Below are positions 2,850 to 57,473 of a DNA stretch of 64,000 nucleotides, in pieces; position 1 is the stretch's first letter, and every line of letters begins with the position of its first letter. A program made the position numbers and the translations under genes. Where the stretch lies: assembly GCF_006345805.1 (NCBI RefSeq), contig NC_043015.1, forward strand, positions 13,950,001 to 14,014,000, in the 5' to 3' direction. The DNA comes from Octopus sinensis. Taxonomy: Eukaryota. The notes under the pieces were generated by a model, which was not told the origin of the DNA, did no database searches, and saw only the letters and a program-made list of their open reading frames with translations.

Positions 2850-5274
2850 AACAGATGTGTGTGTATGTGTGAGTGTGTGCATGTGCGTGTGTGTATGTGT
2901 GTGTGTGAGGCGAGATGAAAAAACAAAAAAATATATATATATATGTGTGTGTTAGTGTGTGCGTCTGTGTGTAGGCGTGTGAGGTAGGGCGAGACTAGTG
3001 GTCAGCTAGCAGACAAGAAAAAGAAGGAAGGAGGAAGGGAGGTCAGTAGTAAGAAAAAGAAGGAAGGAGGAAGGGAGGGAGGGGAAGGGGTGGGGGCGTA
3101 TGTAGCGTGCCAGCGTGTGTTGAGTAGTAGTGTGTGTGTGTGTCCAGTGTCGTGGTGGTATTAATGAGTAGATTGAATGTGTGTAAGAGTGATGTAATAT
3201 ATAGGCAAGGTGTGTATATGTGTGCGCGTGTGTTAACGAAAAAAGGGGGGGGGGTTAAGGAAAAAGGACTCCAGCTGAGGGGAAGATGGAAGTGGTACCG
3301 CGGAGACAGGCGTGGGAAAACCCAACGACACGCGACGGTCCCAGGAACGGGCGGGAGGTCTCGTCAGGTCCAAGGGCGAGGTGTATGCGACGCGTATGCA
3401 ACGCGAGCCGGCGTAAGTGCGTATGTGCGCGTGCCTGCGAGTATGCGCGTACGTATGTATGTGTGTGGATGTGTGAGTGTGTCTGTGTGTATGTCTGGTG
3501 GCAGTGTGTGCGATGAATGTATGTGAGTATGTGTGTATGTATGTGTGTGCATAGATGTATGTCCGTGTGTGTGTGTTATGTGTGTGAGTGTGTATGTATG
3601 TACGTGTGGGTGTGGGGAAGTGTGTGTTGTGCATGTGTGTGCGCGTACATACAGGTGTGTGAGTAAGTGTGTGTGTGTGTATGTATGTGTGAGTGTGTAT
3701 GTATGTGTGTGTCGGATGCATGTATGTGTATGGGTGTATGTATGCGTGTGTGTATGTATGTATGTGTACGTGCGTGGTGTTGTGTGTATGCGTGTAGGTG
3801 TGCGCGGTGTGCATGCATGCATGCATGTGCGTATGTGTGTGTGTGTTGCATGTGTGTGGGTATATATGTATGTGCGTATATGTGTGTGTATGTGCGTACA
3901 TGTGTGTGTGTGTGTATGCATGTGTGTGTATGTAGGTGTGTAGGCGTGTTGTATAGGTGTATGTATGTAAGTATGTGTGGGTGTGTCCTGTATGTGTGTG
4001 TATGTATGTGTGTGTATGTAGGTGTGTGGGCGTGTGTATATGTGTGTGTATGTACGTGTGTGGGCGTGTGTATATAGGTGTATGTGTGTATGTCTGGGTG
4101 TGTCCGTGCATGTTTGTGTGTGTGTGTGTATGCATGTGTATGTGGGTGTGTGTGTACGTGTGTAATGTATGTGTGTGTGTGTTGTGTATGCGTGCGTGTG
4201 TGTATGTAGGTGCGTGTGTATGTGTGTGGGAGTGTAGGTGTGTGTTGCGTGGTGCGTGTTTATGTTGGTGTGTACGTATGTGAGTGTGAGTGTATGGGTG
4301 TTTGTCATGCATGTGTGTGCGCGTGCAGTTGAGTGTGTGGTGTAAGTATGTGTGTGTGTATGTTTGTGTGAGTGTGTAAGTCTGTATGTCTTTGTGTATG
4401 TATGTGCGTATAGGAGTATGTGGGTATGTGTGTATGTATGTATATGGGTGTATGTATGTATGTGTGTGTTGTGTGCATGTGTATAAGTATGTGTGTGTTG
4501 CGTATGTGTGTATATGTATATGTGTGTGTGTTTATGTATGTGTGTATGTATGTGTGTAGGCGTGTGTGTGTAGATGTATGTATGTATGGGTGTGGTGTGT
4601 TGTGTGTGTTGTGTGGTGTGTAGGTGATGTGTGTGTCTGAATGAGGGTATGGCTGTGTAGGTGTGTGTGTGTATGAATGTAAGTGTGTGTGTATACAAGT
4701 GTAATGTATGTAGTAGTGTGTTGTGTGTGTGTGTATGTGTACGTGTGCGTGTGTATGTGTGGTGTGTATGCGTGTGATGTGATGTGTATGGGTATGTCTG
4801 TGTGTGTGTATGTCTGAAGTAGGTATGTATGTGTATGTATGTATGTGTGTGTGTGTGCAGGTATGTGTGTGTATGTGTGTGTGTGAGTAGGTGTGCGTGT
4901 ATGTATGTGGGTAGGGATGCATGCGAGTGTGTGGGTATGTATGCATACATACGTACGCGCACATCCGAAGCAAGCCCACACGCACAAAGCGCGCTCACGC
5001 ACACAACGCACAAGCAGTACAACGCAAGCCCAAGGGCCGACCAAGCCCCCAACGCGCGCCAAGGCGCGCGAGCGCAAAGGCCCTCGAACGCCCCGCTACG
5101 CGGGAACCGAGGATCCATCAGCCAAACCGGAAAGCAGAAAAGAGGGGGGGCTGCCTGGATGCAAAAAGGTGTATGTGTGTGTGCATCAGTGTAAGGGTGT
5201 GCATGTGTGGGCATGTATGTATGTATGTGCCTACATGTATGTTTGCATGTGTGTGTGTGAAGTATGTACGTGCG

Positions 5275-5310
<36 letters not shown>

Positions 5311-5620
5311 GCGTATGTATGTGTGTGTGTATGTGTGTATGTATGTCTGTGGTGTGTGTGTGTGTAAGTATGTATGTGTGTGCGTATGTATGTGTGTGTG
5401 TGTATGTGCATGTTGGTTTGTAATTAGTGTGTGCTAGTATGTCTGTAAGTGTGTGTGATTAAATTGTGAATGTATGTACGTAAATGGGTCTGCGTATGTG
5501 TGTGTGTGAACAGGCGTGTGGGAGGTAGGTGTTGGGTGTGTGTGGGAGGTAGGTGGGTGGTGTGTGCGTGTGGGAGGCAGGTGGGTGTGTGTGTGTGGTG
5601 GTGTGCCAAAAAAAAAAAAA
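2850..5620. repeat. ~2.8-kb degenerate GT/GTAT-rich cryptic simple repeat with embedded GC-rich blocks
   Basis: Imperfect (GT)/(ATGT) periodicity throughout; source of the His/Thr/Tyr and Val/Cys ORFs. Confidence 0.85.
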
Positions 5621-19316: not shown

Positions 19317-19616
19317 CTGAAAAATTTATGAGCTAACCTCAGACAGAATCGAACTCACAAATCGACGCTTTCGTTACTCCTTGCGAATCTGATTGGCCAA
19401 ACGCTCACCCATCAATTTCAGTCAAATTTAGTTAATATATACTCAAACTGTCTTGATAATACATAAACGATATTGTTATCAAGAGTTTGAGTATATTTTA
19501 ACTAAATTTAACTGAAATTGATGGGTGAGTGTTTGGCCAATCAGATTCGCAAGAAGCCACGAAAGCTTTGATTTGTGAGTTCGATTCTGCCTGAGGTTAG
19601 CTCACAAATTTTTCAG
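19317..19616. repeat. 300-bp foldback palindrome (~143-bp arms, ~16-bp spacer); MITE-like
   Basis: ctgaaaaatttatgagctaacctcag...tcttgataa is the reverse complement of ttatcaaga...ctgaggttagctcacaaatttttcag, with scattered mismatches. Confidence 0.9.
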
Positions 19617-22329: not shown

Positions 22330-22657
22330 ATACAAAATGAGAAAATGGAGAAATATATCTAAATCAATCATCAACTATCAGATAATACCCAATCAATACT
22401 TTATTAAGCCATTACACAATAGCAATGATATTATACATTAATATAGTACAAATATAACAAGACATAGAAATAGAAATAGAAATACATTTACATTGTAGCT
22501 GACAGCTGTTTCGGCCGTGAAGACAGGTATGTCCCATTTAACCTATTAGCCATATAAAGCAGGTATAAATGAGACATTAACAAGAATGTCTCACGGCCTC
22601 TTCAGAGAATCTGATAGTTGATGATTGATTTAGATATATTTCTCCATTTTCTCATTT

Positions 22658-22662
<5 letters not shown>
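22330..22662. mobile_element. 333-bp element with perfect 53-bp terminal inverted repeats enclosing a hammerhead motif
   Basis: 22330-22382 atacaaaatgagaaaatggagaaatatatctaaatcaatcatcaactatcaga is the exact reverse complement of 22610-22662. Confidence 0.85.
22495..22610 (-). ncRNA. Minimal type I hammerhead ribozyme motif (intact core, weak stem I)
   Basis: Minus strand: CUGAAGA (22605-22599); stem II GGCCGUGA-GAC / GUC-U-UCACGGCC; GAAAC-AGCU-GUC, i.e. palindromic stem III with a GUC cleavage triplet ending at 22501. Stem I has only 2 bp. Confidence 0.7.
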
Positions 22663-29593: not shown

Positions 29594-31216
29594 CAGTGGG
29601 GGGGGGGATAAATATTCGTACACGTCAAAATTCTTTATTTATTTAATTTCTAATGAACATGAATGGAATATACCAATACTATATTTGCATACACATGCAT
29701 AAAACTAAAAATATGCAAAAGAAACTAATAAATTATAGTAACTAATGAATTTATATACAATTATAAATTTTTAGGGGTGAAAAATGTATTCATACAGAAT
29801 AAATTTATGATTTATGATTTCTATGCCACAAAATACTGTTAAAATAATTTTTTTTACTAGAACTTTCTCGTTTGTTCCAATAATCATATCAGTTGTCATT
29901 TTTAAGTGTCAAAACACTAGCTTCTTCATTCAGCACTGAGACAACAAAGTAGTATCGTAATAATGGGGAAAAGTAAAGAACTCACAAATTCAGTGAAAAA
30001 CTCAATTATTGAACAGTGGAAAGCAGGTAAAAGTTACAGGAAAATATCAGAGATCCTTTGTATTCCATTTTCTACCATATCTTCATTTATTCAAATACAT
30101 AAAAAAGATCGGGAACTGTTAAAAACAGAATAAGATCCGGTGCACCATGCAAGATTTCCCCTGGTCTTTAAGAAAAATGAAGCGAAGAATCGAAAAAAAA
30201 AAAACGCAATGATCACCAGAAACGAGTTGCAAGAAGATTTGTTAGCTTCGGGGACTAATGTTACACTACGAACAATCAGCAATGAACTTCATAGGAATGA
30301 ACTGAAGTCACGCTCCCCTAGAAAAACTTCACTGTTGACTAAAAGGCATAGAGATGCCGGTTTAAATTTTGTTTATGAACATAAAGATAAATCTGATACA
30401 TTCTGGGAAAATGTTCTATGGACAGATGAGTCGAAAATTGAATTGTTTAGACGAAATTCGCGTAGCCATGTTTGGAGGAAAGATGGTACCACCTATTCGC
30501 CGAAAAACACAATTCCTACTGTAAAGTTTGGAGGTGGCAACATCATGGTGTGGGGGTGTTTCTCTGCAAAGAATACTGGCAATTTACATGTGATAGATGG
30601 TAGAATGAATGCAGAGATGTACCAAAATATTTTGAACAATAATTTATGGGACTCTGTAGAAAAGCTCCAGCTTTGTGAAGGGTAGGTTTTACAACTGGAT
30701 AACGGCTCTAAGCACACGGCGAAGTCTATCAAAAATGGATTGTCAATCAGAATATAAAATTATTAGAATGGCCAAGCCAGTCCCTTGACTTGAACCCTAT
30801 TGAAAATTTGTGGCGTTATTTGAAAGTTACAATTCATTTAAGAGTCCCAAAATGCATTGCAGATTTGAAGAAAATTTGTCAAGAAGAATGGGAAAAAATT
30901 CCTAAAGAAACATGCAAGTCATTGATTAAGAACTACAAGAAGAAATTGGTTGAAGTGGAACTGAATAATGGTTAGGTTACGAAGTATTAAATCATAATTA
31001 TCAGTTATTTATGTTCTGTACGAATACTTTTTTCACCCCGAAATATTTATGATTGCATATAAATTCATTAGTTACTGTAATTTATTGGTTTCTTTTGCAT
31101 ATTCTTAGTTTATGCATGTGTATTCAAATATAGTATTGGTATATCCCATTTATGTTCATTAGAAATTAAATAAATAAAGAATTTTGACATGTACGAATAT
31201 TTATTTGCACCCACTG
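29594..31216 (+). mobile_element. Near full-length Tc1 (DD34E) transposon with ~210-bp TIRs and TA TSDs
   Basis: TA|cagtggg...aaatattcgtacacgtcaaaattc at 29594 mirrors gaattttgacatgtacgaatattt...cccactg|TA at 31216; 1623 bp. Confidence 0.95.
29963..30990 (+). pseudogene. Tc1 transposase, frameshifted with premature stop
   Basis: MGKSKELTNSVKNSII (paired-like HTH), [49 protein letters not shown]. Frameshift near 30110, TAG at ~30683. Confidence 0.92.
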
Positions 31217-31845: not shown

Positions 31846-32456
31846 CATACATATATACATACCAGCGGACACGTGTGGACAGCTGTCACGCATGTATATT
31901 TGCATATATGAATGTATGTACTCATGCATCTATGTACATGTGTATGTATGTATGCATGTTTTTCGATGTATGTGGATAAAGGATGTAAAAGTCAATAGAA
32001 AGACGGAGCTATTGAAACTAAGTCCTTTGCAGGAGCTATAAACACTCCCATGTCACTCTGCCCATTAGTAATCCAAAGCAATTGGCTAATGGGATAACTG
32101 TAACCAACGACGGTATTATCAATAAATATAGAGAGATATAAAACAAAGATAAAACCGTAAATCAACAGGTATAGGTTATTTACGTATGTTGTTAGGCGTT
32201 ACTAGAAACAGAAATAAAGTGATATTTGACAAGTGTGTTGGAGATACATAAAGTAATAATTTCTAACACAAACACACGGCCTCAAATTTTGGGAATGGAG
32301 TAAAGTTAATTTAATCGATCCAAATGTTTGACTGGTACAAATTGAATGGAGACCGGAAGCCTTGTTTCCCCTTTGTGCGCGTGTTGCACGAAATACATTA
32401 ATGCGCCCCTAAAAAGTTAGGTGTCTAAAATGTTGTAATAATGAATACACAAACAG

Positions 32457-32529
32457 AAACGTTTAGCTAAGAGATTATCTTCAATAATGCTAATAGCATT
32501 ATTGAAGATAATCTCTTAGCTAAACGTTT
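32457..32529. repeat. Perfect 73-bp palindrome (36-bp arms, 1-nt spacer)
   Basis: aaacgtttagctaagagattatcttcaataatgcta-a-tagcattattgaagataatctcttagctaaacgttt. Confidence 0.95.
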
Positions 32530-32747
32530 TTGTTAAGTTGATTTTTTAAAAAATACTATATTTGCACATCATTCATAAAACTCCCCTCATCTGTTCCAGT
32601 TTGTGCAGTAGCTTCACGACTACAGCAAAGGTTTGGTGGACAGTATTTACATAAAAGTTTACAAAGTTTTCCAATTCTATAGAAAGCTCATCTTGCTGTG
32701 TTTTTGTTAAATAGCCAGCTATGTAACATGGTTAATATATATACACC

Positions 32748-36789: not shown

Positions 36790-37385
36790 TTCTGGCAGGC
36801 CAAGGAGGCAAACCTTTTGCAACAGTTCTACTGGGCACTCTATTCCAATTTGTTTTATATTCCCCTTAATGCCTTCTGATACTGGCCCCAAGGACCCAAC
36901 AATAATTGGGACTATCTTTACCTTCTTCATTCTCCATAGCAGGGCTATTTCGTACTTAAAAGGGTTATATTTATCTATTTTTTGCTTTCCTTCTTGACTA
37001 TTCTTAGATAAGTGGGGTTGCAACATCCACCATATAGCACATGTGGTGCATCTTGGTCCGGTTTGTTATGCTTTAGCACCTGATCTGTTTGGATTGGGAA
37101 ATCCCAGAGGATTTTGCTAATCTCCGACTCCGCCACTCTCTGCAATTTGGGCTCATACCACATCTTACTTCTTTCTATCCCCCACTTTTCGCATACTTTC
37201 CAATGTGGCACTTTCGCTACCTGATCGTGTCGCCATAACTTGTAGCGGTTTGGGGCAAGTCTAGGACATTCTTCTGTGATATGGGAAATAGTTTCATCCA
37301 CTCTATTATAGATGCGGCACAGTGGAGACACTTGCTCATTCCAAAGGTTGACTATCCAGTTCGTGACGAAAGCCTGGTCTTTCGG
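36790..37385 (-). mobile_element. R4/Dong-clade LINE 3' region (CCHC knuckle + restriction-like endonuclease)
   Basis: SPLCRIYNRVDETISHITEEC..LA...RHDQVAK..HWKVC...ILWDFPIQTD..KHNKPD, then KIDKY...EIALLW..KVKIVPIIVGSLG...LQKVCLLG. Confidence 0.88.
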
Positions 37386-37709
37386 AGTCGATAAATTAAG
37401 CAGCAGTGAAACACTGGGATTGATGTAGACCCTCCCCCAAAATTTCAGGAATTGTGCCTTTAGAAAGGAAAGAAGGAAAGAAGGAAGGAAGGAAGGAAGG
37501 AAGGAAGGAAGGAAGGAAGGAAGGAAGGGAGGGAAGAAGGAAGGGAGGAAGGAAGGAAGGAAGGAAGGATGGATCTTTGCCTTTTATCATTTCGGGGTCG
37601 ATGAAATAAATACCAGTTAAGCACTGGGACAAATATAATCGATTAGTCTCCTTCTCTCAGATTTTAGGCCTTATGCTTATAATCGAAAGGATGATTATTA
37701 TAGTAAAAA

Positions 37710-40459: not shown

Positions 40460-41140
40460 TACGAGGTGCATTCAAAAACTATCAGACTTTATTTTCCCCA
40501 TCAAACTAGTACCAGGTTGTCAAAATCCTTTGGTTAAAAAGTGACGTCACCCTTCCTGCGCGCGCTTGAAAGTTTTTGCTTTGGTAGGCTGCGCCAGTTC
40601 CCGGCTGTCACACCTAGAGTACAAGCGTGTAGTGCGTGTTCGTAGGATTTTCGTTTTCACCGAACACATCGAGCAGAGATATTGCATCAAGTTTAGCTAA
40701 AAGCTTTCTGATACTCTAGTTCAAACCATCCAGAAGATTCAGCAGGCCTTTGGCGATGATGCCATGAGCAAAACTCAGATCACGGAGTGGTACAACCGCT
40801 TCAAGCACGGCCGCGCCTCAGTGGAGGGCGAGACACTCTCAGGCATGCCATCCACCAGCCGAAGCAAGGAACCGAAACAAGGATCGAGCAATCATGCAAG
40901 ATCGTCTTATAATAATCCAGGAAACTGCGCACGAAGTGGGAGTAAGCACAGGATCAGTGCATTCCAGTGTAACGGAGGATTTGTGTTCGCGGAGAGTGTT
41001 GGCGAAATTCGCCCCCAAGATGCTGGCGGACCAGGAGAAGCAACTCCGCATGGAAATCACTCAGGCTATGTTGGACTGTGCAAGCCACGACTCATACTTC
41101 ATAAAAACCATCATCACTGGTGATGAAGCATATGTTTATG
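40460..41140 (+). mobile_element. 3'-truncated mariner
   Basis: TA|cgaggtgcattcaaaaac TIR; EQRYCIKF...AFGDDAMSKTQITEWYNRFKHG...RRVLAKFAPKML...IITGDEAYVYG. Confidence 0.9.
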
Positions 41141-41286
41141 GTCTCTGCTTGACGCGTTCGGTCAAATTACGTGTAAACGGAAATCCGACTAGCGCGCACC
41201 ACACGTCTATACTCTAGGTGTAATACTCTAAGTGTATTCTAACCGGGAAATGATGCATCCTACTGGCGCGAAAATTTACGCGTATA

Positions 41287-41805
41287 CCGTAAATCCTCGA
41301 GTATAGTCCGCCCTTGAGTATAATACGCAGGGGATTTTTAGGGGGCTGTACCTCTGAAAAACCTAAACCTTGTGTATAATACGCACCCCTTCTCTAACTT
41401 GAGTCAAGGAGGTCTATATAACGTCCTTGGTTTGTAAAACTATACGGTAACGTCCTTTATTATTATTGTATATATAACATAATGCAAACGTGTAGCTTTT
41501 TTGTGCATTTTGTTTGCAGAAAATAAAGAAATAACAGTAATAACAGTAATAACATTTAATAAATGTTGCTTACTGCATGTTATGAATGATTCTTTTATGA
41601 CTTCATTGCTTACTGGCTTAGCTTAAGGTATTTTCGCACCCGACACCACAAAATGCGTCTAAATAAGCATTGCCGGGCAGCAAATAGAGATTTGGACATT
41701 GCTTAGAAAATAATTTTCATTTTTAGCCTCGTATATAGTACGCACTAGGGATTTTGACCTTTAAATTTTGGGGAGAAAATGCGGATTATACTCGAGGATT
41801 TACGG
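41287..41805. mobile_element. 519-bp MITE of the Tc1/mariner superfamily (Tc2/pogo-like termini)
   Basis: TA|ccgtaaatcctcgagtatagtccgc ... gcggattatactcgaggatttacgg|TA. Confidence 0.9.
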
Positions 41806-41989
41806 TACGAAGGAAAAGTGAATTCCCTTCTCAGCCAAAGGATTTTGCTTATGCGGCATTCATTTTGACAGGAAAAATGAAGTCAGATACTTTTTGAACG
41901 CACCTTATACTCCTTTAAAGTATCTCAGGTGAAGAACCTTTAGAAAGTCATACAAATTTTTACAGATACGCAAATAGACTGACGACAAT

Positions 41990-42395
41990 CTTTCTTCGTT
42001 TGGCTATGACATATTTCTATGGTCTGTGAGAAAGTTGTGACGTGTTCTAATTGCTTTGATGGTGTTCATGTTACCACGATAAAACTTTAGGTCATCAACA
42101 AAAAATGTGTGGGTGATATTAATTTTATTATTTTCTGCATATCTCAGCATATAGCCTTGGCATTTCGTTAACGGGGCTGACAACGAGTTCACTGTCAGTA
42201 CAAACATTACAGATAAACTATCACCCTGGAATATTCCCGCTGATAACCTAATTCCTTTTGTGACTATAGGTGTTGTTTCAGTTGTTAGGGATCAATGTGT
42301 GAACCATGTGATTAGTCTTTCAACGACATTAATGAGTGCTTTGGCAAGGTATAGCGATTCTAGCACCCTTGGATGAAGCACAGTGTCAAATGCCT
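41990..42395 (-). mobile_element. R4/Dong-like LINE reverse transcriptase fragment
   Basis: KQAFDTVLH, AGIFQGDSLS, HTFFVDDLKFY (RT core motifs). Confidence 0.82.
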
Positions 42396-42539
42396 GCTTG
42401 TTTCCTATGTATGTATGTATGTATGTATGTATTGATGCCTGAATGCATGTATGTATATATATGCAGATTTGTATTCCTTGTTTTATGTATGTATTCTCAT
42501 GCATATAGTTGCATGTCTAGACATGCTCATATATATATA

Positions 42540-43130
42540 CTTAAATGCTAAACTTCTGAAAAGTTTTACAGATTTTTACAGTTCCGGTGATGGCTTGGAT
42601 CTGTAGTCTTCGAATCAGCTTTCTCTCTTGTTTTGAGTAGCCTAATTTCTCAAGACTGGTATTTAGGCGGTGTTACATATTCCAGGGCCCTAACAATTAC
42701 AAGTATAAACCCGAACTTGTAATGTGGATGGAGTAATTCTAGATTTCTCAATAGTTCAGCGTAGGCATTCTTTTTCACTGATCTTTAGCTTTATGTTAAC
42801 ATCCGTTGGGTTGCTGATTTCCGCAACTCTACAGTTTCTCTTCTCTGTCCTCAGTCACTATGTCAGGTCTATTATGTTCACATTTTATTGAGATTTCACT
42901 AGGACATTCCACTTGTACCCCCTTTTATTATGAGTGGTTATGGCTTCCACTATACAGTGGGTTCTCATTACTTTCTCCCCGGAGTTATCCTTCCGACAGA
43001 TCTCATTATATGTATGTATGCATACTATATCCTTTGTCACTATTGCCTTTACGTTATTTTCATAATTGTAAACGTTTCTTTTGATGTAACTTTCATTTTC
43101 CGAGTTCACCTGTACCAACATATATCCTTC
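42540..43130 (-). mobile_element. R4/Dong-like LINE endonuclease/3' end (second family)
   Basis: YNEICRKDN...YKWNVLVK...CEHNRPDIV...ISNPTDVNI...AYAELLRNL...LIRRLQIQAITGTVKICKTF. Confidence 0.8.
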
Positions 43131-43564: not shown

Positions 43565-43635
<71 letters not shown>

Positions 43636-43915
43636 AAGAGGAAGCTAGAGTCTCTGTGTGTGTGTACTCGTCTGTATCTCTTTAGCATGTGTGTTTTGTG
43701 AGTGTACATGGGTTGCTTCCTGTACTGTTTGTATTCGCGCCCTTTACATATATATATATATATATACTATTTATTTATCTATTTATTTATTTATTCATTT
43801 ACTTAATCATCTTTCTATTTTACCCCATTCCATCTTAAGTATGTGTATGTGTGTCTTTTGTGTGTGTGTGTGTATGGGTTAATGTATTACACTGCTTTTA
43901 TCTGTTTGTATCTTT

Positions 43916-44800
43916 GTCTCATTCTTCTCCTGTTCTGTCTCTAGTCGTCATGTTCTGTAGTGTGGTGGTGATGGTGGTGGTGGTGGTGGATGTTATTGTT
44001 CCATTCGTGTTTCTGTTAAGGCTCAGTCTGTCTATTACTATTTCGTATTTGCTAGTTCGCCGCCAGGGGTAGCATTAACATGACACTGGTATATTTGATT
44101 GTCATACCATGATTTGGACTTACCTCTCTTTTTCTTGGGCCTTTCTATGCTGTTCCAAGATTTACTCCTGTATAGCAGGCAGATCCCATTTGCATCAATC
44201 TTTATGATAGCCTTGTACTTAGACCGACCTATGTACACTCTAATTCTTTCCCTTTGGCTGTAGCTAGAGAACTGCATACATATCTTTTTAGGAAAACATT
44301 AGATAAGGTAAATCTACGGACTGAAGTAGTAGAAAAGCCAGGAACCCCCGTAAAATCCTTGATCTGTAGGACATGTCCAGTCGAAAGCCCCTGTGTACGG
44401 AGAACAAATGTATAGTATGCAGGATGGATCAACCCACAGTTTAACTGCAAGATTAGGAGTGTAGCATACAGTGTACTGAGGGACGCTGCAGAAACAAGGC
44501 AACTTACAATGGTGAGACAGCACGTAATATAGCTGTACACTGGCGGGAGCTCAAAGAGGAGAAAGGCTCGTTAGTGATCTATCAACATTTTCAATTAGAA
44601 CGTAGGGGTTCAGTTAATAACATAGAAGTTAAGGTATTATCAACGCATAGAACAGACATGACACTTAGACAGATTACAAATAGAGATAGTAATATAGAGA
44701 CCGAACCTCAACAGAAAGCACGAATGGAACAATAACACACATCACCACCAAACTAAGTAAAATGACGACTAAAGACAGAATGGGAGGAAAAAATGAGACA
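43916..44800 (+). mobile_element. 5'-truncated Penelope-like element (GIY-YIG region) with inverted copy of its 3' end at the 5' junction
   Basis: Frames give EVVEKPGTPVKSLICRTCP...C...ATYNGETARN...KVLSTH...TLRQIT...NRKHEW. 43916-44052 is a diverged reverse complement of 44677-44799. Confidence 0.8.
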
Positions 44801-44802
44801 TA

Positions 44803-45046
44803 CGGTGTTACATATTCCAGGGCCCTAACAATTACAAGTATAAACCCGAACTTGTAATCTGGATGGAATAATTCTAGATTTCTCAATAGTTCAGCGTAGG
44901 CATTCTTTTTCACTGATCTTTAGCTTTATGTCCGCCAGCATCTTGGGGGAGAATTTCGCCAACACTCTCCGCGAACACAAATCCTCCGTTAAACTGGAAT
45001 AATACGCAGGGGGTTTTTAGGGGGCTGTACCTCTGAAAAACCTAAA
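44803..45046. other. Composite locally templated insertion (three segments)
   Basis: 44803-44931 = 42668-42796 (2 mismatches in 129); 44931-45000 = reverse complement of 40961-41030 (2 in 70); 44999-45046 = 41320-41367 (1 in 48). Confidence 0.9.
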
Positions 45047-45170
45047 GATGAAATGGGGGAAAATAGAGAGATGAATAAGTAAATAAAGGAAAATAAGTAA
45101 ATATACGTAATGTTTGATGCTTTTTGTCTAGCACAACATATGCATATTATTTAAGAACAGTGGAAGAAGA

Positions 45171-45205
<35 letters not shown>

Positions 45206-46244
45206 GAAGAGAGAGAGAAAAAGAGAGAGAGACAGAGACCAGCTCACAGTAACGAGTGACAAAGATTTTCCCAGACGACCTAGTGGCTCTCAGGCCTGAG
45301 CTTGCATTTGCCAGCTTTTATAACTGTAAGCCAATTCTAGAATCTTCTATCAAACTGTTCGACGGAAAAATTGTTACTTTGAAGCGTGAAGTCGACTCAT
45401 ATTCACTTAGGCTTTTTGACGACACTTCTTTTCTTTTATGGAGGCACATTAGCTCATGGTTCTAAACTGGGAAAATCTGAGAGTTGTGGTTCAAAACTTC
45501 GCCGGAGTCGTGCTACATATGTTCGCATTTCAGAGTGTGTGTGTGTGTGTGTGTGTCTGGTCTTCATATTAATAGAGAAAGGAAGGTCAACTCATACCTT
45601 CCAGCGATAGGCATTTGTATATAAACAAGAGTCTGAATCTCATAACATTCATAGTTTTCTCAGTGGTTATATAAAAATTTGAATCGACTGAGAGAAACTG
45701 TAAATGAAGTGAACTAAAACAGTAGAAAAACACATTCAGCTTCTTTACAATTAAAGCAGAATAGAAATAAAGACCTAGAAATATACTTAACTCAGAAGGT
45801 CAACACGTCTTTATTATGTACAGACATCTGCGAATGCATCTAAGTAAACAGTCGACTTTCCTTTTCGTAAATATAGTGTGTCAACTTTGTTAGAATAGAG
45901 AATATAAACTGTATAGCTCAAAGCAAAAGTTTAAATCAGATAAGATAAAATTAGTCTTCTTTTTCGACTCAAGATACTTTGTGTTTCAAGCAGCCTTCTG
46001 GTCTACGCACATCTTCTGTTTAAAAGATTGTTTTGAAGCAAATGTTTTAATAATATAGAAATGAATTTATGTCACAAATATGTAACAGTCCATTACTGGT
46101 AAGTTTTATTCAGCTGAAAACCCACAAATTGTAGGACATAAAAACTACATAAAATAATTTTTTTTAAACTGTTAGTTTATAGGTGCTAAAACAGACTCAC
46201 CATATTGCATCATATGAAGAGATTCAAACGTTTCTTATCTCACA

Positions 46245-47077: not shown

Positions 47078-47199
47078 CTGTTCCCGTCTACCAAATCCAT
47101 TCACAAGGTGTTTGCCAGCCTGGAGCTATAGTAGAAGATACTCGCTCAAGATTGCAAAGCAAACTTCTTAACCACATAGTTCTGCCTATTTATATGTAC

Positions 47200-47269
47200 A
47201 CATACACACATGCATATGTAATACATACATACACACACGCGCGCATACATACATACATACATACATACA

Positions 47270-47305
<36 letters not shown>

Positions 47306-47341
47306 TACGTACGTACGTAAGAACGTACATACATACATACA

Positions 47342-47375
<34 letters not shown>

Positions 47376-47920
47376 CGTACGTACGTAAGTACGTACATAC
47401 ATACATACATACATACATACATACATACATACATACGTACGTACGTACGTACATACAAACATACATACATGCATACGTATGTACGTATGTACATACATAC
47501 AAACATACATATATACATGCATACATACATACATACATACATACATACATACATACATACATACATACATACATACATACATACATACATACATACGTAC
47601 GTACGTAAGTACGTACATACATACATACATACATACATACATACATACATACATACATACATACATACATACATACGTACATACATACATACATACATTC
47701 GTACGTACATACATACATACGTACGTACGTACGTAAATACATACAAACATACGTACATACATGCATACGTACGTACGTACGTACATACATACAAACATAC
47801 AAACATACATACATACATACATACGTAAGTACGTACATACATACATACATACATACATACATACATACATACATACATACATACATACATACATACATAC
47901 ATACATACATACATACATTA
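47200..47920. repeat. ~700-bp (ATAC)n/(GTAC)n compound microsatellite
   Basis: Directly visible; recurring variant block acgtacgtaagtacgtac. Confidence 0.95.
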
Positions 47921-56829: not shown

Positions 56830-56976
56830 ATATGTATGTATTATATTATTTATTAATTATTTAATTGAACGCAATGCATTCATTTCCAAGTATATATATA
56901 TATTATTTATTTAACTTTACGGAGATGTACTTGCACAGCGAGTGACTTGATCTGAGATCGTGTGCTAGAACGAAAA

Positions 56977-57160
56977 CAATTGCAGCGTGGAAGGTGTTTT
57001 TAAGCCATTTAAGAAACACACAAAAACCGTTAGATTCATTTCAACATTTATATTTATATTTATATTTATTTTTGACAAATTAAATATAAATGTTGAAGTG
57101 AATCTAACGGTTTTTGTGTGTTTCTTAAATGGCTTATAAACACCTTCCACGCTGCAATTG
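56977..57160. repeat. Foldback: 79-bp arms (2 mismatches), 26-bp spacer
   Basis: caattgcagcgtggaaggtgtt...caacatttatattt / aaatataaatgttg...aacaccttccacgctgcaattg. Confidence 0.92.
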
Positions 57161-57473
57161 ATTTATTTAACTAATATTGTTATTAATGTTAACCTGAAGA
57201 GTGACTATAATTTCAAATTGAATTGTTTTTCGATTAAATTTAAATATAATTGTAATTCGAATTTAATTATAGCCATGAAACGTACGTAGTTTTCTTTACT
57301 TATTATATATTGTTTATTCATTTTGTGCTTTTTGTGATCTTTTGTTATGTGTTTTAAAAAATATACTTTATTTTTTATTTATGATTTGGTTTATGTTTAT
57401 CATTGTTTGAATTGCATAATAGTGGTTTTTCTCTAATTATAAATTATACATACATACATACATACATACATAA

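What the first reader, a model, noticed from the sequence alone, without database searches (positions are those of the whole stretch)
44803..45046. 244-bp patchwork insertion stitched from three neighbouring loci 2-4 kb upstream
Seen in sequence: three consecutive segments are near-identical to local sequence. These are 129 bp of the R4 LINE at 42668-42796 (direct), 70 bp of the mariner at 40961-41030 (inverted) and 48 bp of the MITE at 41320-41367 (direct), with 5 mismatches in total. Junctions carry 1-2 nt microhomologies (t, at, aa). The block sits in the right arm of the PLE inverted repeat, where the left arm has ~85 bp including a (TG)n tract. Inference: a break at a microsatellite or foldback was repaired by serial template switching (polymerase theta-mediated end joining or MMBIR-type), fusing three unrelated TE classes into a new chimeric sequence.
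Basis: partly seen in the sequence, partly recalled or inferred. Interest (0 to 1): 0.75.

Follow-up and report, generated by a model that had tools for sequence, protein, structure and literature searches.

The report
Patchwork repair scar from local transposons
A 244-base stretch in a junk-DNA region was stitched together from three short pieces copied out of transposon remnants 2-4 kb away; this is a real but ordinary scar of error-prone DNA break or replication repair, with no sign of a function.

Summary
Window 44803-45046 consists of three abutting copies of local sequence: 42668-42796 (direct, 127/129), 41031-40961 (inverted, 69/71) and 41320-41367 (direct, 47/48). These are the only copies in the 64 kb. 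They are also its most similar dispersed repeats: other transposon copies are 80-90% alike.

Each donor is an internal piece of a longer element:
- the C-terminal coding region of an R2-superfamily (restriction-like-endonuclease type) LINE;
- the DNA-binding region of an internally deleted mariner;
- a TA-flanked 523-bp MITE.

No junction coincides with a transposon end. Junctions overlap by GT, AT and AA (possibly CTAAA), and by 0-1 nt on the left.

The patch replaces about 75 nt, including a (TG)n tract that survives in the left arm, within the right arm of an old inverted repeat (76-84% identity). That repeat looks like the 3' end of a Penelope-like element.

Best reading: a break or collapsed fork was repaired by serial microhomology-primed template switching on nearby DNA. 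Segment lengths and distances fit FoSTeS/MMBIR better than canonical polymerase-theta joining.

Not testable here: genome-wide copy number, spanning reads, the pre-insertion allele.

Known kind of event; modest interest.

The parts
44803..44931 (+). Patch segment 1: direct copy of 42668-42796 (127/129).
   Evidence: (D8)
44930..45000 (-). Patch segment 2: inverted copy of 40961-41031 (69/71). It shares GT with segment 1 and AT with segment 3.
   Evidence: (I5)
44999..45046 (+). Patch segment 3: direct copy of 41320-41367 (47/48). Its last 2-5 nt overlap the right-flank homology.
   Evidence: (D12)
42668..42796 (-). Donor 1: internal piece of the C-terminal coding region of an R2-superfamily (restriction-like-endonuclease type) LINE fragment. 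The fragment spans 42903->42544 on the minus strand.
   Evidence: tblastn of relative P0003 (aa 527-649) runs colinearly across and beyond the donor. Long relatives carry RVT_1 only, with no AP-endonuclease domain. The best solved structures are R2 proteins, E = 1e-32.
40961..41031 (+). Donor 2: internal piece of an internally deleted mariner (40610-41221, terminal inverted repeats of 51 nt at 80%). It lies in the transposase DNA-binding region.
   Evidence: Pfam HTH_48, E = 8e-8. SETMAR E = 3e-7 and Mos1 E = 2e-5, with the Mos1 alignment spanning the donor. 142 relatives. Terminal repeats.
41320..41367 (+). Donor 3: internal piece of a 523-bp MITE (41285-41807) with 27-nt terminal inverted repeats (96%) and TA on both sides.
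   Evidence: (I3, I5)
43780..44051 (+). Left arm of the old inverted repeat. Its 43840-43914 stretch, with (TG)n at 43842-43873, occupies the position that the patch occupies in the right arm.
44677..44800 (+). Right arm, inner part: 76% identical to rc 43915-44051. It ends at the left junction of the patch.
45042..45103 (+). Right arm, outer part: 84% identical to rc 43780-43839. It starts at the right junction of the patch.
44370..44735 (+). Degenerate reading frame with motifs like those of a Penelope-like-element endonuclease: C-x4-C-xx-C at 44394-44420, two Cys before YNGET at 44457-44528, stop at 44733-44735. The right arm begins inside it.
   Evidence: Motif reading only, set against the description in PMC8557442. 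No hit in Pfam, NCBIfam, PDB or the protein database.
43604..43640 (+). (GA)n tract on the left of the PLE-like composite. It matches the (AG)n at 45174-45238 in the same orientation, which suggests the composite inserted into a microsatellite.
45174..45238 (+). (AG)n tract on the right of the PLE-like composite.

Best explanation
The patch is a germline repair scar.

Proposed sequence of events:
1. A DNA end arose inside the right arm of an old, foldback-capable inverted repeat, at or next to a (CA/TG)n tract.
2. About 75 nt of the arm were lost.
3. The 3' end was extended by low-processivity synthesis that primed on 0-5 nt of microhomology and copied single-stranded DNA of the same chromosome region or the sister chromatid:
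   - 129 nt at 42.7 kb;
   - after a strand switch, 71 nt at 41.0 kb;
   - after another strand switch, 48 nt at 41.3 kb.
4. The end then re-annealed to the far side of the break through AA or CTAAA. The same steps may have run in the reverse order on the other strand.

The donors were copied, not moved.

I commit to a replicative FoSTeS/MMBIR-type process, meaning iterative template switches after fork collapse, as the most likely enzymology.

Shown:
- the three-part copy;
- the direction of copying;
- the junction overlaps;
- replacement of arm sequence;
- the patch being much younger than the inverted repeat.

Inferred:
- that the local copies were the actual templates;
- that the trigger was the microsatellite or the foldback;
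- which polymerase did the work.
For: - All 244 nt are accounted for by three local templates at 97-98.5% identity, with E = 1e-17 to 1e-60 within the window.
- These are the only copies in 64 kb and the most similar dispersed repeats there. Other inter-locus transposon matches are 80-90% identical. With at most about one copy of each segment per 64 kb, three unrelated families all lying within 4.2 kb of the patch by chance has a probability below about 1e-3.
- Protein homology runs colinearly through and beyond donors 1 and 2. Donor 3 lies inside a MITE bounded by terminal repeats. No patch junction is a transposon terminus, so the patch was copied from the elements and did not arise by transposition.
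- Three of four junctions have at least 2 nt of overlap. The chance of that under blunt joining is 0.013.
- The left arm keeps 75 nt with a (TG)n tract exactly where the right arm has the patch. As single-stranded DNA the two arms pair in the minimum-energy fold.
- The arms are 76-84% identical while patch and donors are 98% identical, so the event long post-dates the inverted repeat.
- The two mariner mismatches can be assigned to different lineages using 94 relatives. At site 1 the patch keeps the common Leu (83/94) and the donor has Val. At site 2 the donor has Ala, one step from the common Val (71/94), and the patch has Ser, one step further. That indicates real divergence after the copy, not a read artefact.
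- Close comparators exist in the literature. Human FoSTeS/MMBIR junctions include a 182-bp insertion templated from four discontinuous segments by six switches, an 861-bp insertion from three switches, and nearby point errors (PMC6902434).
Against: - The donors could not be checked against the rest of the genome. If these families are young and abundant, closer copies may exist elsewhere.
- The left junction has 0-1 nt of microhomology, which is unusual for a first MMBIR invasion.
- No copy-number change or larger rearrangement accompanies the patch, whereas FoSTeS/MMBIR was defined on such events.
- Short patchwork insertions are also made by iterative polymerase-theta synthesis (PMC8654963).
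- Five substitutions in 248 nt could be later mutations or synthesis errors, so the age of the event is uncertain.
Confidence: 0.5

Rival explanations
1. The product is the same, but it was made by polymerase-theta-mediated end joining of a two-ended break. Repeated abortive rounds of priming on 1-2 nt and short synthesis gave a 'patchwork' deletion-insertion.
For: - A deletion and an insertion occur at one site, with 2-nt overlaps at the internal junctions and a blunt or 1-nt left junction.
- Patchwork templated insertions from iterative polymerase-theta rounds are described in helq-1 worms and are common in plants (PMC8654963).
- A substitution-rich copy fits a low-fidelity polymerase.
Against: In the large C. 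elegans data set, inserts have a median of 5 bp, 37-44% map within 20 bp of the break, and only 2-3% come from more than 1 kb away (PMC5068794). Here the tracts are 48-129 nt and all three templates lie 2.0-3.9 kb away.
Confidence: 0.25
2. The templates were not the local copies. Either the three-part chimera is itself a repeat family, or each piece came from another, more similar member of its family elsewhere in the genome.
For: - All three donors belong to multicopy element types.
- Identity to the local copies is 97-98%, not 100%.
- At one mariner site the patch, not the local donor, carries the family-typical residue.
Against: - All three families have their only copy in the window within 4.2 kb of the patch.
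- Other repeats in the window are 80-90% alike, and the LINE and mariner copies are degenerate, so these look like old families in which 98% identity is exceptional.
- Junctions inside element bodies, with microhomology, are not what nested transposition produces.
Confidence: 0.1
3. RNA-templated patch. A retroelement reverse transcriptase of the R2 or Penelope type, enzymes known for template jumping, extended the broken end. It copied nascent local transposon transcripts one after another.
For: - On the top strand, both segments whose orientation can be read are antisense to their element's coding strand. This is as expected for cDNA primed from the left end. The chance expectation is 0.5, so this is only a compatibility.
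- LINE and PLE-like sequences are present at the site.
Against: - Diffusible RNAs would not favour local copies.
- The copied pieces are internal, whereas template jumping normally occurs at RNA 5' ends.
- No poly(A) or 3'-end signature is present.
- Both local retroelement copies are degenerate.
Confidence: 0.07
4. Assembly or library artefact, for example a chimeric read or template switching during amplification that was built into the consensus.
For: - Multi-part local chimeras with mixed orientation and short overlaps are typical of amplification chimeras.
- No reads are available here.
Against: - The five differences are all substitutions, with no indels, and fall on both lineages. An artefact would be identical to its templates apart from sequencing error.
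- The patch sits exactly where an ancestral stretch of the arm is missing.
Confidence: 0.05

Closest known systems
Iterative template switching at breakpoint junctions (FoSTeS/MMBIR), as described for human complex rearrangements
   Same: - Insertions of tens to hundreds of bp are stitched from several discontinuous nearby segments in either orientation.
- Join-points show microhomology.
- Donors are retained.
- Point errors occur nearby.
- Inverted repeats and microsatellites act as triggers (PMC6902434; PMC8421209).
   Different: - There is no accompanying duplication, triplication or larger rearrangement, only a net replacement of about 75 nt by 244 nt.
- One junction has almost no overlap.
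- This is an old, apparently fixed event in an unidentified invertebrate-like genome, not a de novo human variant.
Polymerase-theta-mediated end joining with templated ('delins', 'patchwork') insertions
   Same: A deletion plus a templated insertion, 1-2 nt priming overlaps, and several stretches joined in series (PMC5068794; PMC8654963).
   Different: Tracts are ten times longer or more than the typical median of 5 bp. All templates lie 2-4 kb away, whereas canonical templates lie within about 20 bp of the break.
Filler DNA / templated sequence insertions at repaired double-strand breaks (plants, mammals, yeast; recalled from my own knowledge)
   Same: A break is sealed with copied fragments of genomic DNA, often transposon-derived.
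   Different: Those insertions often come from unlinked loci or from RNA. Here all three sources are clustered in cis on one side of the break.

Membership tests
Templated insertion by iterative template switching (FoSTeS/MMBIR type) | Inserted sequence is wholly accounted for by templates elsewhere in the genome, and the donors are retained. | tested here: met
   244/244 nt are assigned to three local templates, and the donors are intact.
Templated insertion by iterative template switching (FoSTeS/MMBIR type) | Several join-points; templates nearby in cis, in either orientation. | tested here: met
   Four join-points. Templates lie 2.0, 3.8 and 3.5 kb upstream, in the order direct, inverted, direct.
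Templated insertion by iterative template switching (FoSTeS/MMBIR type) | Microhomology or microhomeology at join-points. | tested here: inconclusive
   GT, AT and AA (up to CTAAA) at three junctions, and 0-1 nt at the fourth. P = 0.013 for at least 3 of 4 junctions having at least 2 nt.
Templated insertion by iterative template switching (FoSTeS/MMBIR type) | Replicative origin (fork collapse; dependence on POLD3/PIF1); associated copy-number change. | not testable with these tools
   No copy-number change is seen in the window. The genetics cannot be tested.
Polymerase-theta end joining (templated delins) | Templates in the immediate flanks of the break (tens of bp) and short inserts. | tested here: not met
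   Templates lie 2-4 kb away and tracts are 48-129 nt. The canonical values are a median of 5 bp and templates within 20 bp (PMC5068794).
Polymerase-theta end joining (templated delins) | Deletion at the insertion site and terminal overlap of at least 1 nt. | tested here: met
   About 75 nt of arm sequence is replaced. Overlaps are present at 3-4 junctions.
Transposon insertion (any class) | Element termini at the junctions and a target-site duplication. | tested here: not met
   All segment ends are internal to their elements, and no duplication flanks the patch.
mariner (donor 2) | Mos1-type transposase HTH domains; terminal inverted repeats. | tested here: met
   HTH_48 E = 8e-8. SETMAR and Mos1 structures E = 3e-7 and 2e-5. 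51-nt terminal repeats at 80%. The catalytic domain is absent because of an internal deletion. TA duplication is unclear.
MITE (donor 3) | Short, non-coding, terminal inverted repeats, target-site duplication. | tested here: met
   523 bp, 27-nt terminal repeats at 96%, TA on both sides, no long ORF.
R4-clade LINE (donor 1) | Non-LTR reverse transcriptase with a C-terminal restriction-like endonuclease and no AP endonuclease (R2 superfamily). | tested here: met
   RT relatives reach E = 2e-17. Eight long relatives have RVT_1 only. The best solved structures are R2 proteins, E = 1e-32. The C-terminal HNRPDI-type motif was read.
R4-clade LINE (donor 1) | Phylogenetic placement within R4/Dong rather than R2, NeSL, HERO or others. 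| not tested
   No reference set or names were available.
Penelope-like element (recipient) | GIY-YIG endonuclease with CCHH cysteines between GIY and YIG, with or without a CX2-5CxxC linker, joined to a telomerase-like RT. | tested here: inconclusive
   Motifs are readable at 44394-44591 and fit the description in PMC8557442. There is no statistical hit in Pfam, NCBIfam, PDB or the protein database.
Penelope-like element (recipient) | Hammerhead ribozyme in the terminal repeat. | tested here: not met
   Rfam scan of 38-48 kb at E <= 1 gave only sub-threshold microRNA-like hits driven by microsatellites.
Penelope-like element (recipient) | Inverted or direct pseudo-LTR arrangement; insertion into a microsatellite. 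| tested here: met
   An inverted partial 3'-end copy lies upstream of a 5'-truncated copy. (GA)n lies on both sides.

The most novel reading that the evidence does not exclude
The patch was written by a retroelement reverse transcriptase acting in break repair. The enzyme would have jumped between nascent transcripts of the neighbouring LINE, mariner and MITE that were still tethered near the break. That would make this a natural example of RNA-templated, multi-jump chromosomal repair in an animal germline.
Probability: 0.07. Interest if true: 0.7.

Novelty: new member of a known kind. Interest (0 to 1): 0.3.

Why it matters
This is a clean natural example of one repair event fusing fragments of three unrelated transposon classes. 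All templates are still present next door, so every join-point can be read.

Such cases help to calibrate how far and how long template switching can reach in animal germlines. They also show how inverted repeats and microsatellites seed small complex mutations.

It affects no recognisable gene. The mechanism class is well documented, so its value is as an illustration or as a data point for a genome-wide survey, not as a discovery.

Tried and rejected
**Searches for the junctions or the element families elsewhere (all empty)**
- Exact look-ups of window ORFs in the gene-position index gave nothing: the 79-aa ORF across the left junction, a mariner ORF and a Tc1 ORF.
- A protein search with concatenated junction-spanning peptides gave no hit at E <= 10.
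- Exact DNA scans for the segment 2/3 junction 30-mer and for the MITE terminal repeat found nothing in the metagenome and prokaryote genome collections.
- The closest database mariner is only 63% identical, so the host's own copies are not represented. The 'repeat family' and 'better distant donor' tests therefore could not be run.

**PLE identification**
- Pfam, NCBIfam, PDB and the word-indexed protein search all returned nothing.
- Rfam found no hammerhead.

**Corrected along the way**
- Pfam also missed the degenerate LINE reverse transcriptase. The exhaustive search recovered it.
- My first guess, that donor 1 lay upstream of the RT domain, was wrong. tblastn places it in the C-terminal endonuclease region.

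**Readings considered and rejected**
- Nested transposition: no element termini at the junctions.
- Helitron or Pack-type capture: no element ends around the patch.
- Origin during integration of the PLE itself: the arms are 76-84% identical, against 98% for patch and donors.
- Repair of a transposon excision site: nothing but an unassigned TA supports it.

Cluster names for the LINE relatives were uninformative.

Full report
**Observation**

The sequence at 44803-45046 reads as three abutting copies of sequence found 2-4 kb upstream. blastn of 44600-45300 against the whole window gives:

| Patch | Source | Orientation | Identity | E-value |
|---|---|---|---|---|
| 44803-44931 | 42668-42796 | direct | 127/129 | 9e-61 |
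| 44930-45000 | 41031-40961 | inverted | 69/71 | 3e-29 |
| 44999-45046 | 41320-41367 | direct | 47/48 | 7e-18 |

- Nothing else matches any of the three segments at E < 1. The repeat finder reports the same pairs (D8, I5, D12).
- A window-wide self-comparison shows these are the most similar dispersed repeats in the 64 kb. Every other match between different loci is 80-90% identical.
- The longest exact shared words outside simple repeats also belong to the patch.
- The five differences are all substitutions: 44859, 44868, 44950, 44992, 45013.

**What the donors are**

*Donor 2 (40961-41031)* lies in an internally deleted mariner.
- Pfam HTH_48 hits just upstream.
- A frame-corrected translation matches SETMAR (E = 3e-7) and Mos1 transposase (E = 2e-5). 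The Mos1 alignment runs straight through the donor.
- 142 relatives exist in the protein database.
- 51-nt terminal inverted repeats bound the element at 40610-41221.

*Donor 3 (41320-41367)* lies 33 nt inside a 523-bp MITE with 27-nt terminal repeats (96%) and TA on both sides.

*Donor 1 (42668-42796)* lies in a LINE on the minus strand.
- The neighbouring reverse-transcriptase fragment has 404 relatives (best E = 2e-17).
- Eight long relatives carry RVT_1 and no AP-endonuclease domain.
- One relative's best solved-structure matches are R2 retrotransposon proteins (E = 1e-32).
- tblastn with relative P0003 shows that 42903->42544 encodes the last 120 residues of the ORF, through to the stop. 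The donor falls in the frame KKNAYAELLRNLELLHPHYKFGF..., which aligns to P0003 residues 575-605.
- The element is therefore a restriction-like-endonuclease (R2-superfamily) LINE. Placement in the 'R4' clade is plausible but untested.

In all three cases homology or element structure continues on both sides of the donor, so copying went from the elements to the patch. None of the patch junctions is an element terminus, which rules out transposition.

**The recipient site**

- The patch flanks form an inverted repeat with 43780-44051 (76% and 84% identity).
- Between the two homologous blocks, the left arm has 75 nt (43840-43914) that include a (TG)n tract. The right arm has the patch instead. 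The event was therefore a replacement: about 75 nt out, 244 nt in.
- The right arm begins inside a degenerate plus-strand reading frame (44370-44735). Its motifs (C-x4-C-xx-C, two cysteines ahead of YNGET, then R, H and E positions) match the published description of canonical endonuclease-bearing Penelope-like elements (PMC8557442).
- The layout also fits that description: a 5'-truncated copy preceded by an inverted partial 3' end, with the whole unit lying between two (GA)n tracts.
- However, no homology search supported the assignment, and no hammerhead ribozyme was found. 'PLE' remains a reasonable reading, not a demonstrated one.
- Folded as single-stranded DNA, the two arms pair with each other and the patch bulges out. 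A foldback at this site is physically plausible.

**Junctions**

| Junction | Overlap |
|---|---|
| Left flank / segment 1 | 0 nt, or 1 nt if the arm homology extends through ATAC; TA (44801-02) unassigned |
| Segment 1 / segment 2 | GT |
| Segment 2 / segment 3 | AT |
| Segment 3 / right flank | AA for certain; CTAAA if the ancestral arm read CTAAA (the left arm reads CTTAA) |

Under blunt joining, at least 2 nt of overlap at three or more of four junctions has probability 0.013.

**Age and authenticity**

- Patch and donors differ by 2%, while the arms of the inverted repeat differ by 16-24%. The patch is therefore much younger than the repeat and is unrelated to its formation.
- The two mariner differences can be assigned to a lineage using 94 relatives and one diverged copy elsewhere in the window.
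  - At the first site the patch keeps the common Leu (83/94) and the donor has Val.
  - At the second site the donor has Ala, one step from the common Val (71/94), and the patch has Ser, one step further.
- Changes on both lineages, all substitutions with no indels, argue for a real event followed by divergence and against a read or assembly chimera.

**Mechanism**

The simplest account is a DNA end in the arm that lost some sequence and was then extended by short bouts of synthesis on three nearby single-stranded templates. The end switched strand twice and used a few bases of overlap each time before rejoining the other side.

Two known processes do this:
- *Polymerase-theta end joining.* It gives deletion-insertions and even 'patchwork' inserts (PMC8654963). 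In the large C. elegans data set, though, inserts have a median of 5 bp, 37-44% map within 20 bp of the break, and only 2-3% come from more than 1 kb away (PMC5068794).
- *Replicative template switching (FoSTeS/MMBIR).* It gives insertions of the size and construction seen here. Examples are 182 bp from four discontinuous segments through six switches, and 861 bp through three switches, with point errors nearby (PMC6902434).

I therefore favour the replicative route (0.5) over polymerase theta (0.25). The sequence alone cannot decide between them.

All three templates lie on one side of the break. That is what would be expected if a collapsed fork's free end re-invaded already replicated DNA behind it, but this is inference.

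**Other rivals**

- *RNA-templated version.* A retroelement reverse transcriptase copying local transcripts is not excluded. On the top strand both orientable segments are antisense to their element's coding strand, but the chance of that is one half. This model also does not explain why the templates are local or why they are internal pieces.
- *Repeat family or distant donors.* These could not be tested, because no collection here contains this genome. The clustering of all three sole copies within 4.2 kb, against a background of 80-90% similar repeats, makes local templating much the more likely reading.

**Verdict**

The finding is real and correctly described in outline. Its mechanism class is well known, and it has no visible functional consequence. 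It is a tidy natural specimen of a multi-template repair scar, of modest interest.

Noticed in passing
window 42049-42903 (minus strand): Two non-colinear fragments of one R2-superfamily LINE family lie in tandem. The ORF C-terminus with its stop (42903->42544) is followed by a (TATG)n tract (42406-42460), and then by a reverse-transcriptase fragment (42414->42049). This looks like a microsatellite-tailed copy stacked on an older 5'-truncated copy.
   Followed up: partly
window 43604-45238: The PLE-like composite (an inverted partial 3' end plus a truncated copy) sits between two (GA)n tracts in the same orientation, as if it inserted into a microsatellite.
   Followed up: partly
window 40521-41847: An outer 40-nt inverted repeat (78%) encloses both the mariner deletion derivative and the MITE. 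This suggests nested DNA transposons that also cut off the LINE reverse-transcriptase fragment at 41848.
   Followed up: no
window 22330-22662: A 333-bp element with perfect 54-nt terminal inverted repeats, next to an (AT)n tract. It is the youngest-looking repeat in the window.
   Followed up: no
window 19317-19616; 32452-32534; 56973-57164: Three near-perfect palindromes of 300, 83 and 192 nt (89-96% self-complementary), possibly foldback elements.
   Followed up: no
window 29608-31204: A Tc1-like element of 1.6 kb with terminal inverted repeats of about 215 nt (90%) and a 181-aa transposase ORF remnant (30140-30685).
   Followed up: no
window 36799-37466 (minus strand): A second, distantly related R2-superfamily LINE C-terminal fragment, about 30% amino-acid identity to the same relatives.
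   Followed up: no
window 3233-5400 and 47146-47918: Very long compound microsatellites: a CA/TG-rich block and a (CATA)n array. Perfect simple repeats make up 7.5% of the window and produce many sub-threshold microRNA-like Rfam hits.
   Followed up: partly
window 40656-41142: The closest database relatives of the mariner (63% amino-acid identity) are 'GVQW3-like' proteins of decapod crustaceans (Macrobrachium, Palaemon) and of a termite. Together with the microsatellite load, this hints at an arthropod, perhaps decapod, host. This is a guess only.
   Followed up: no
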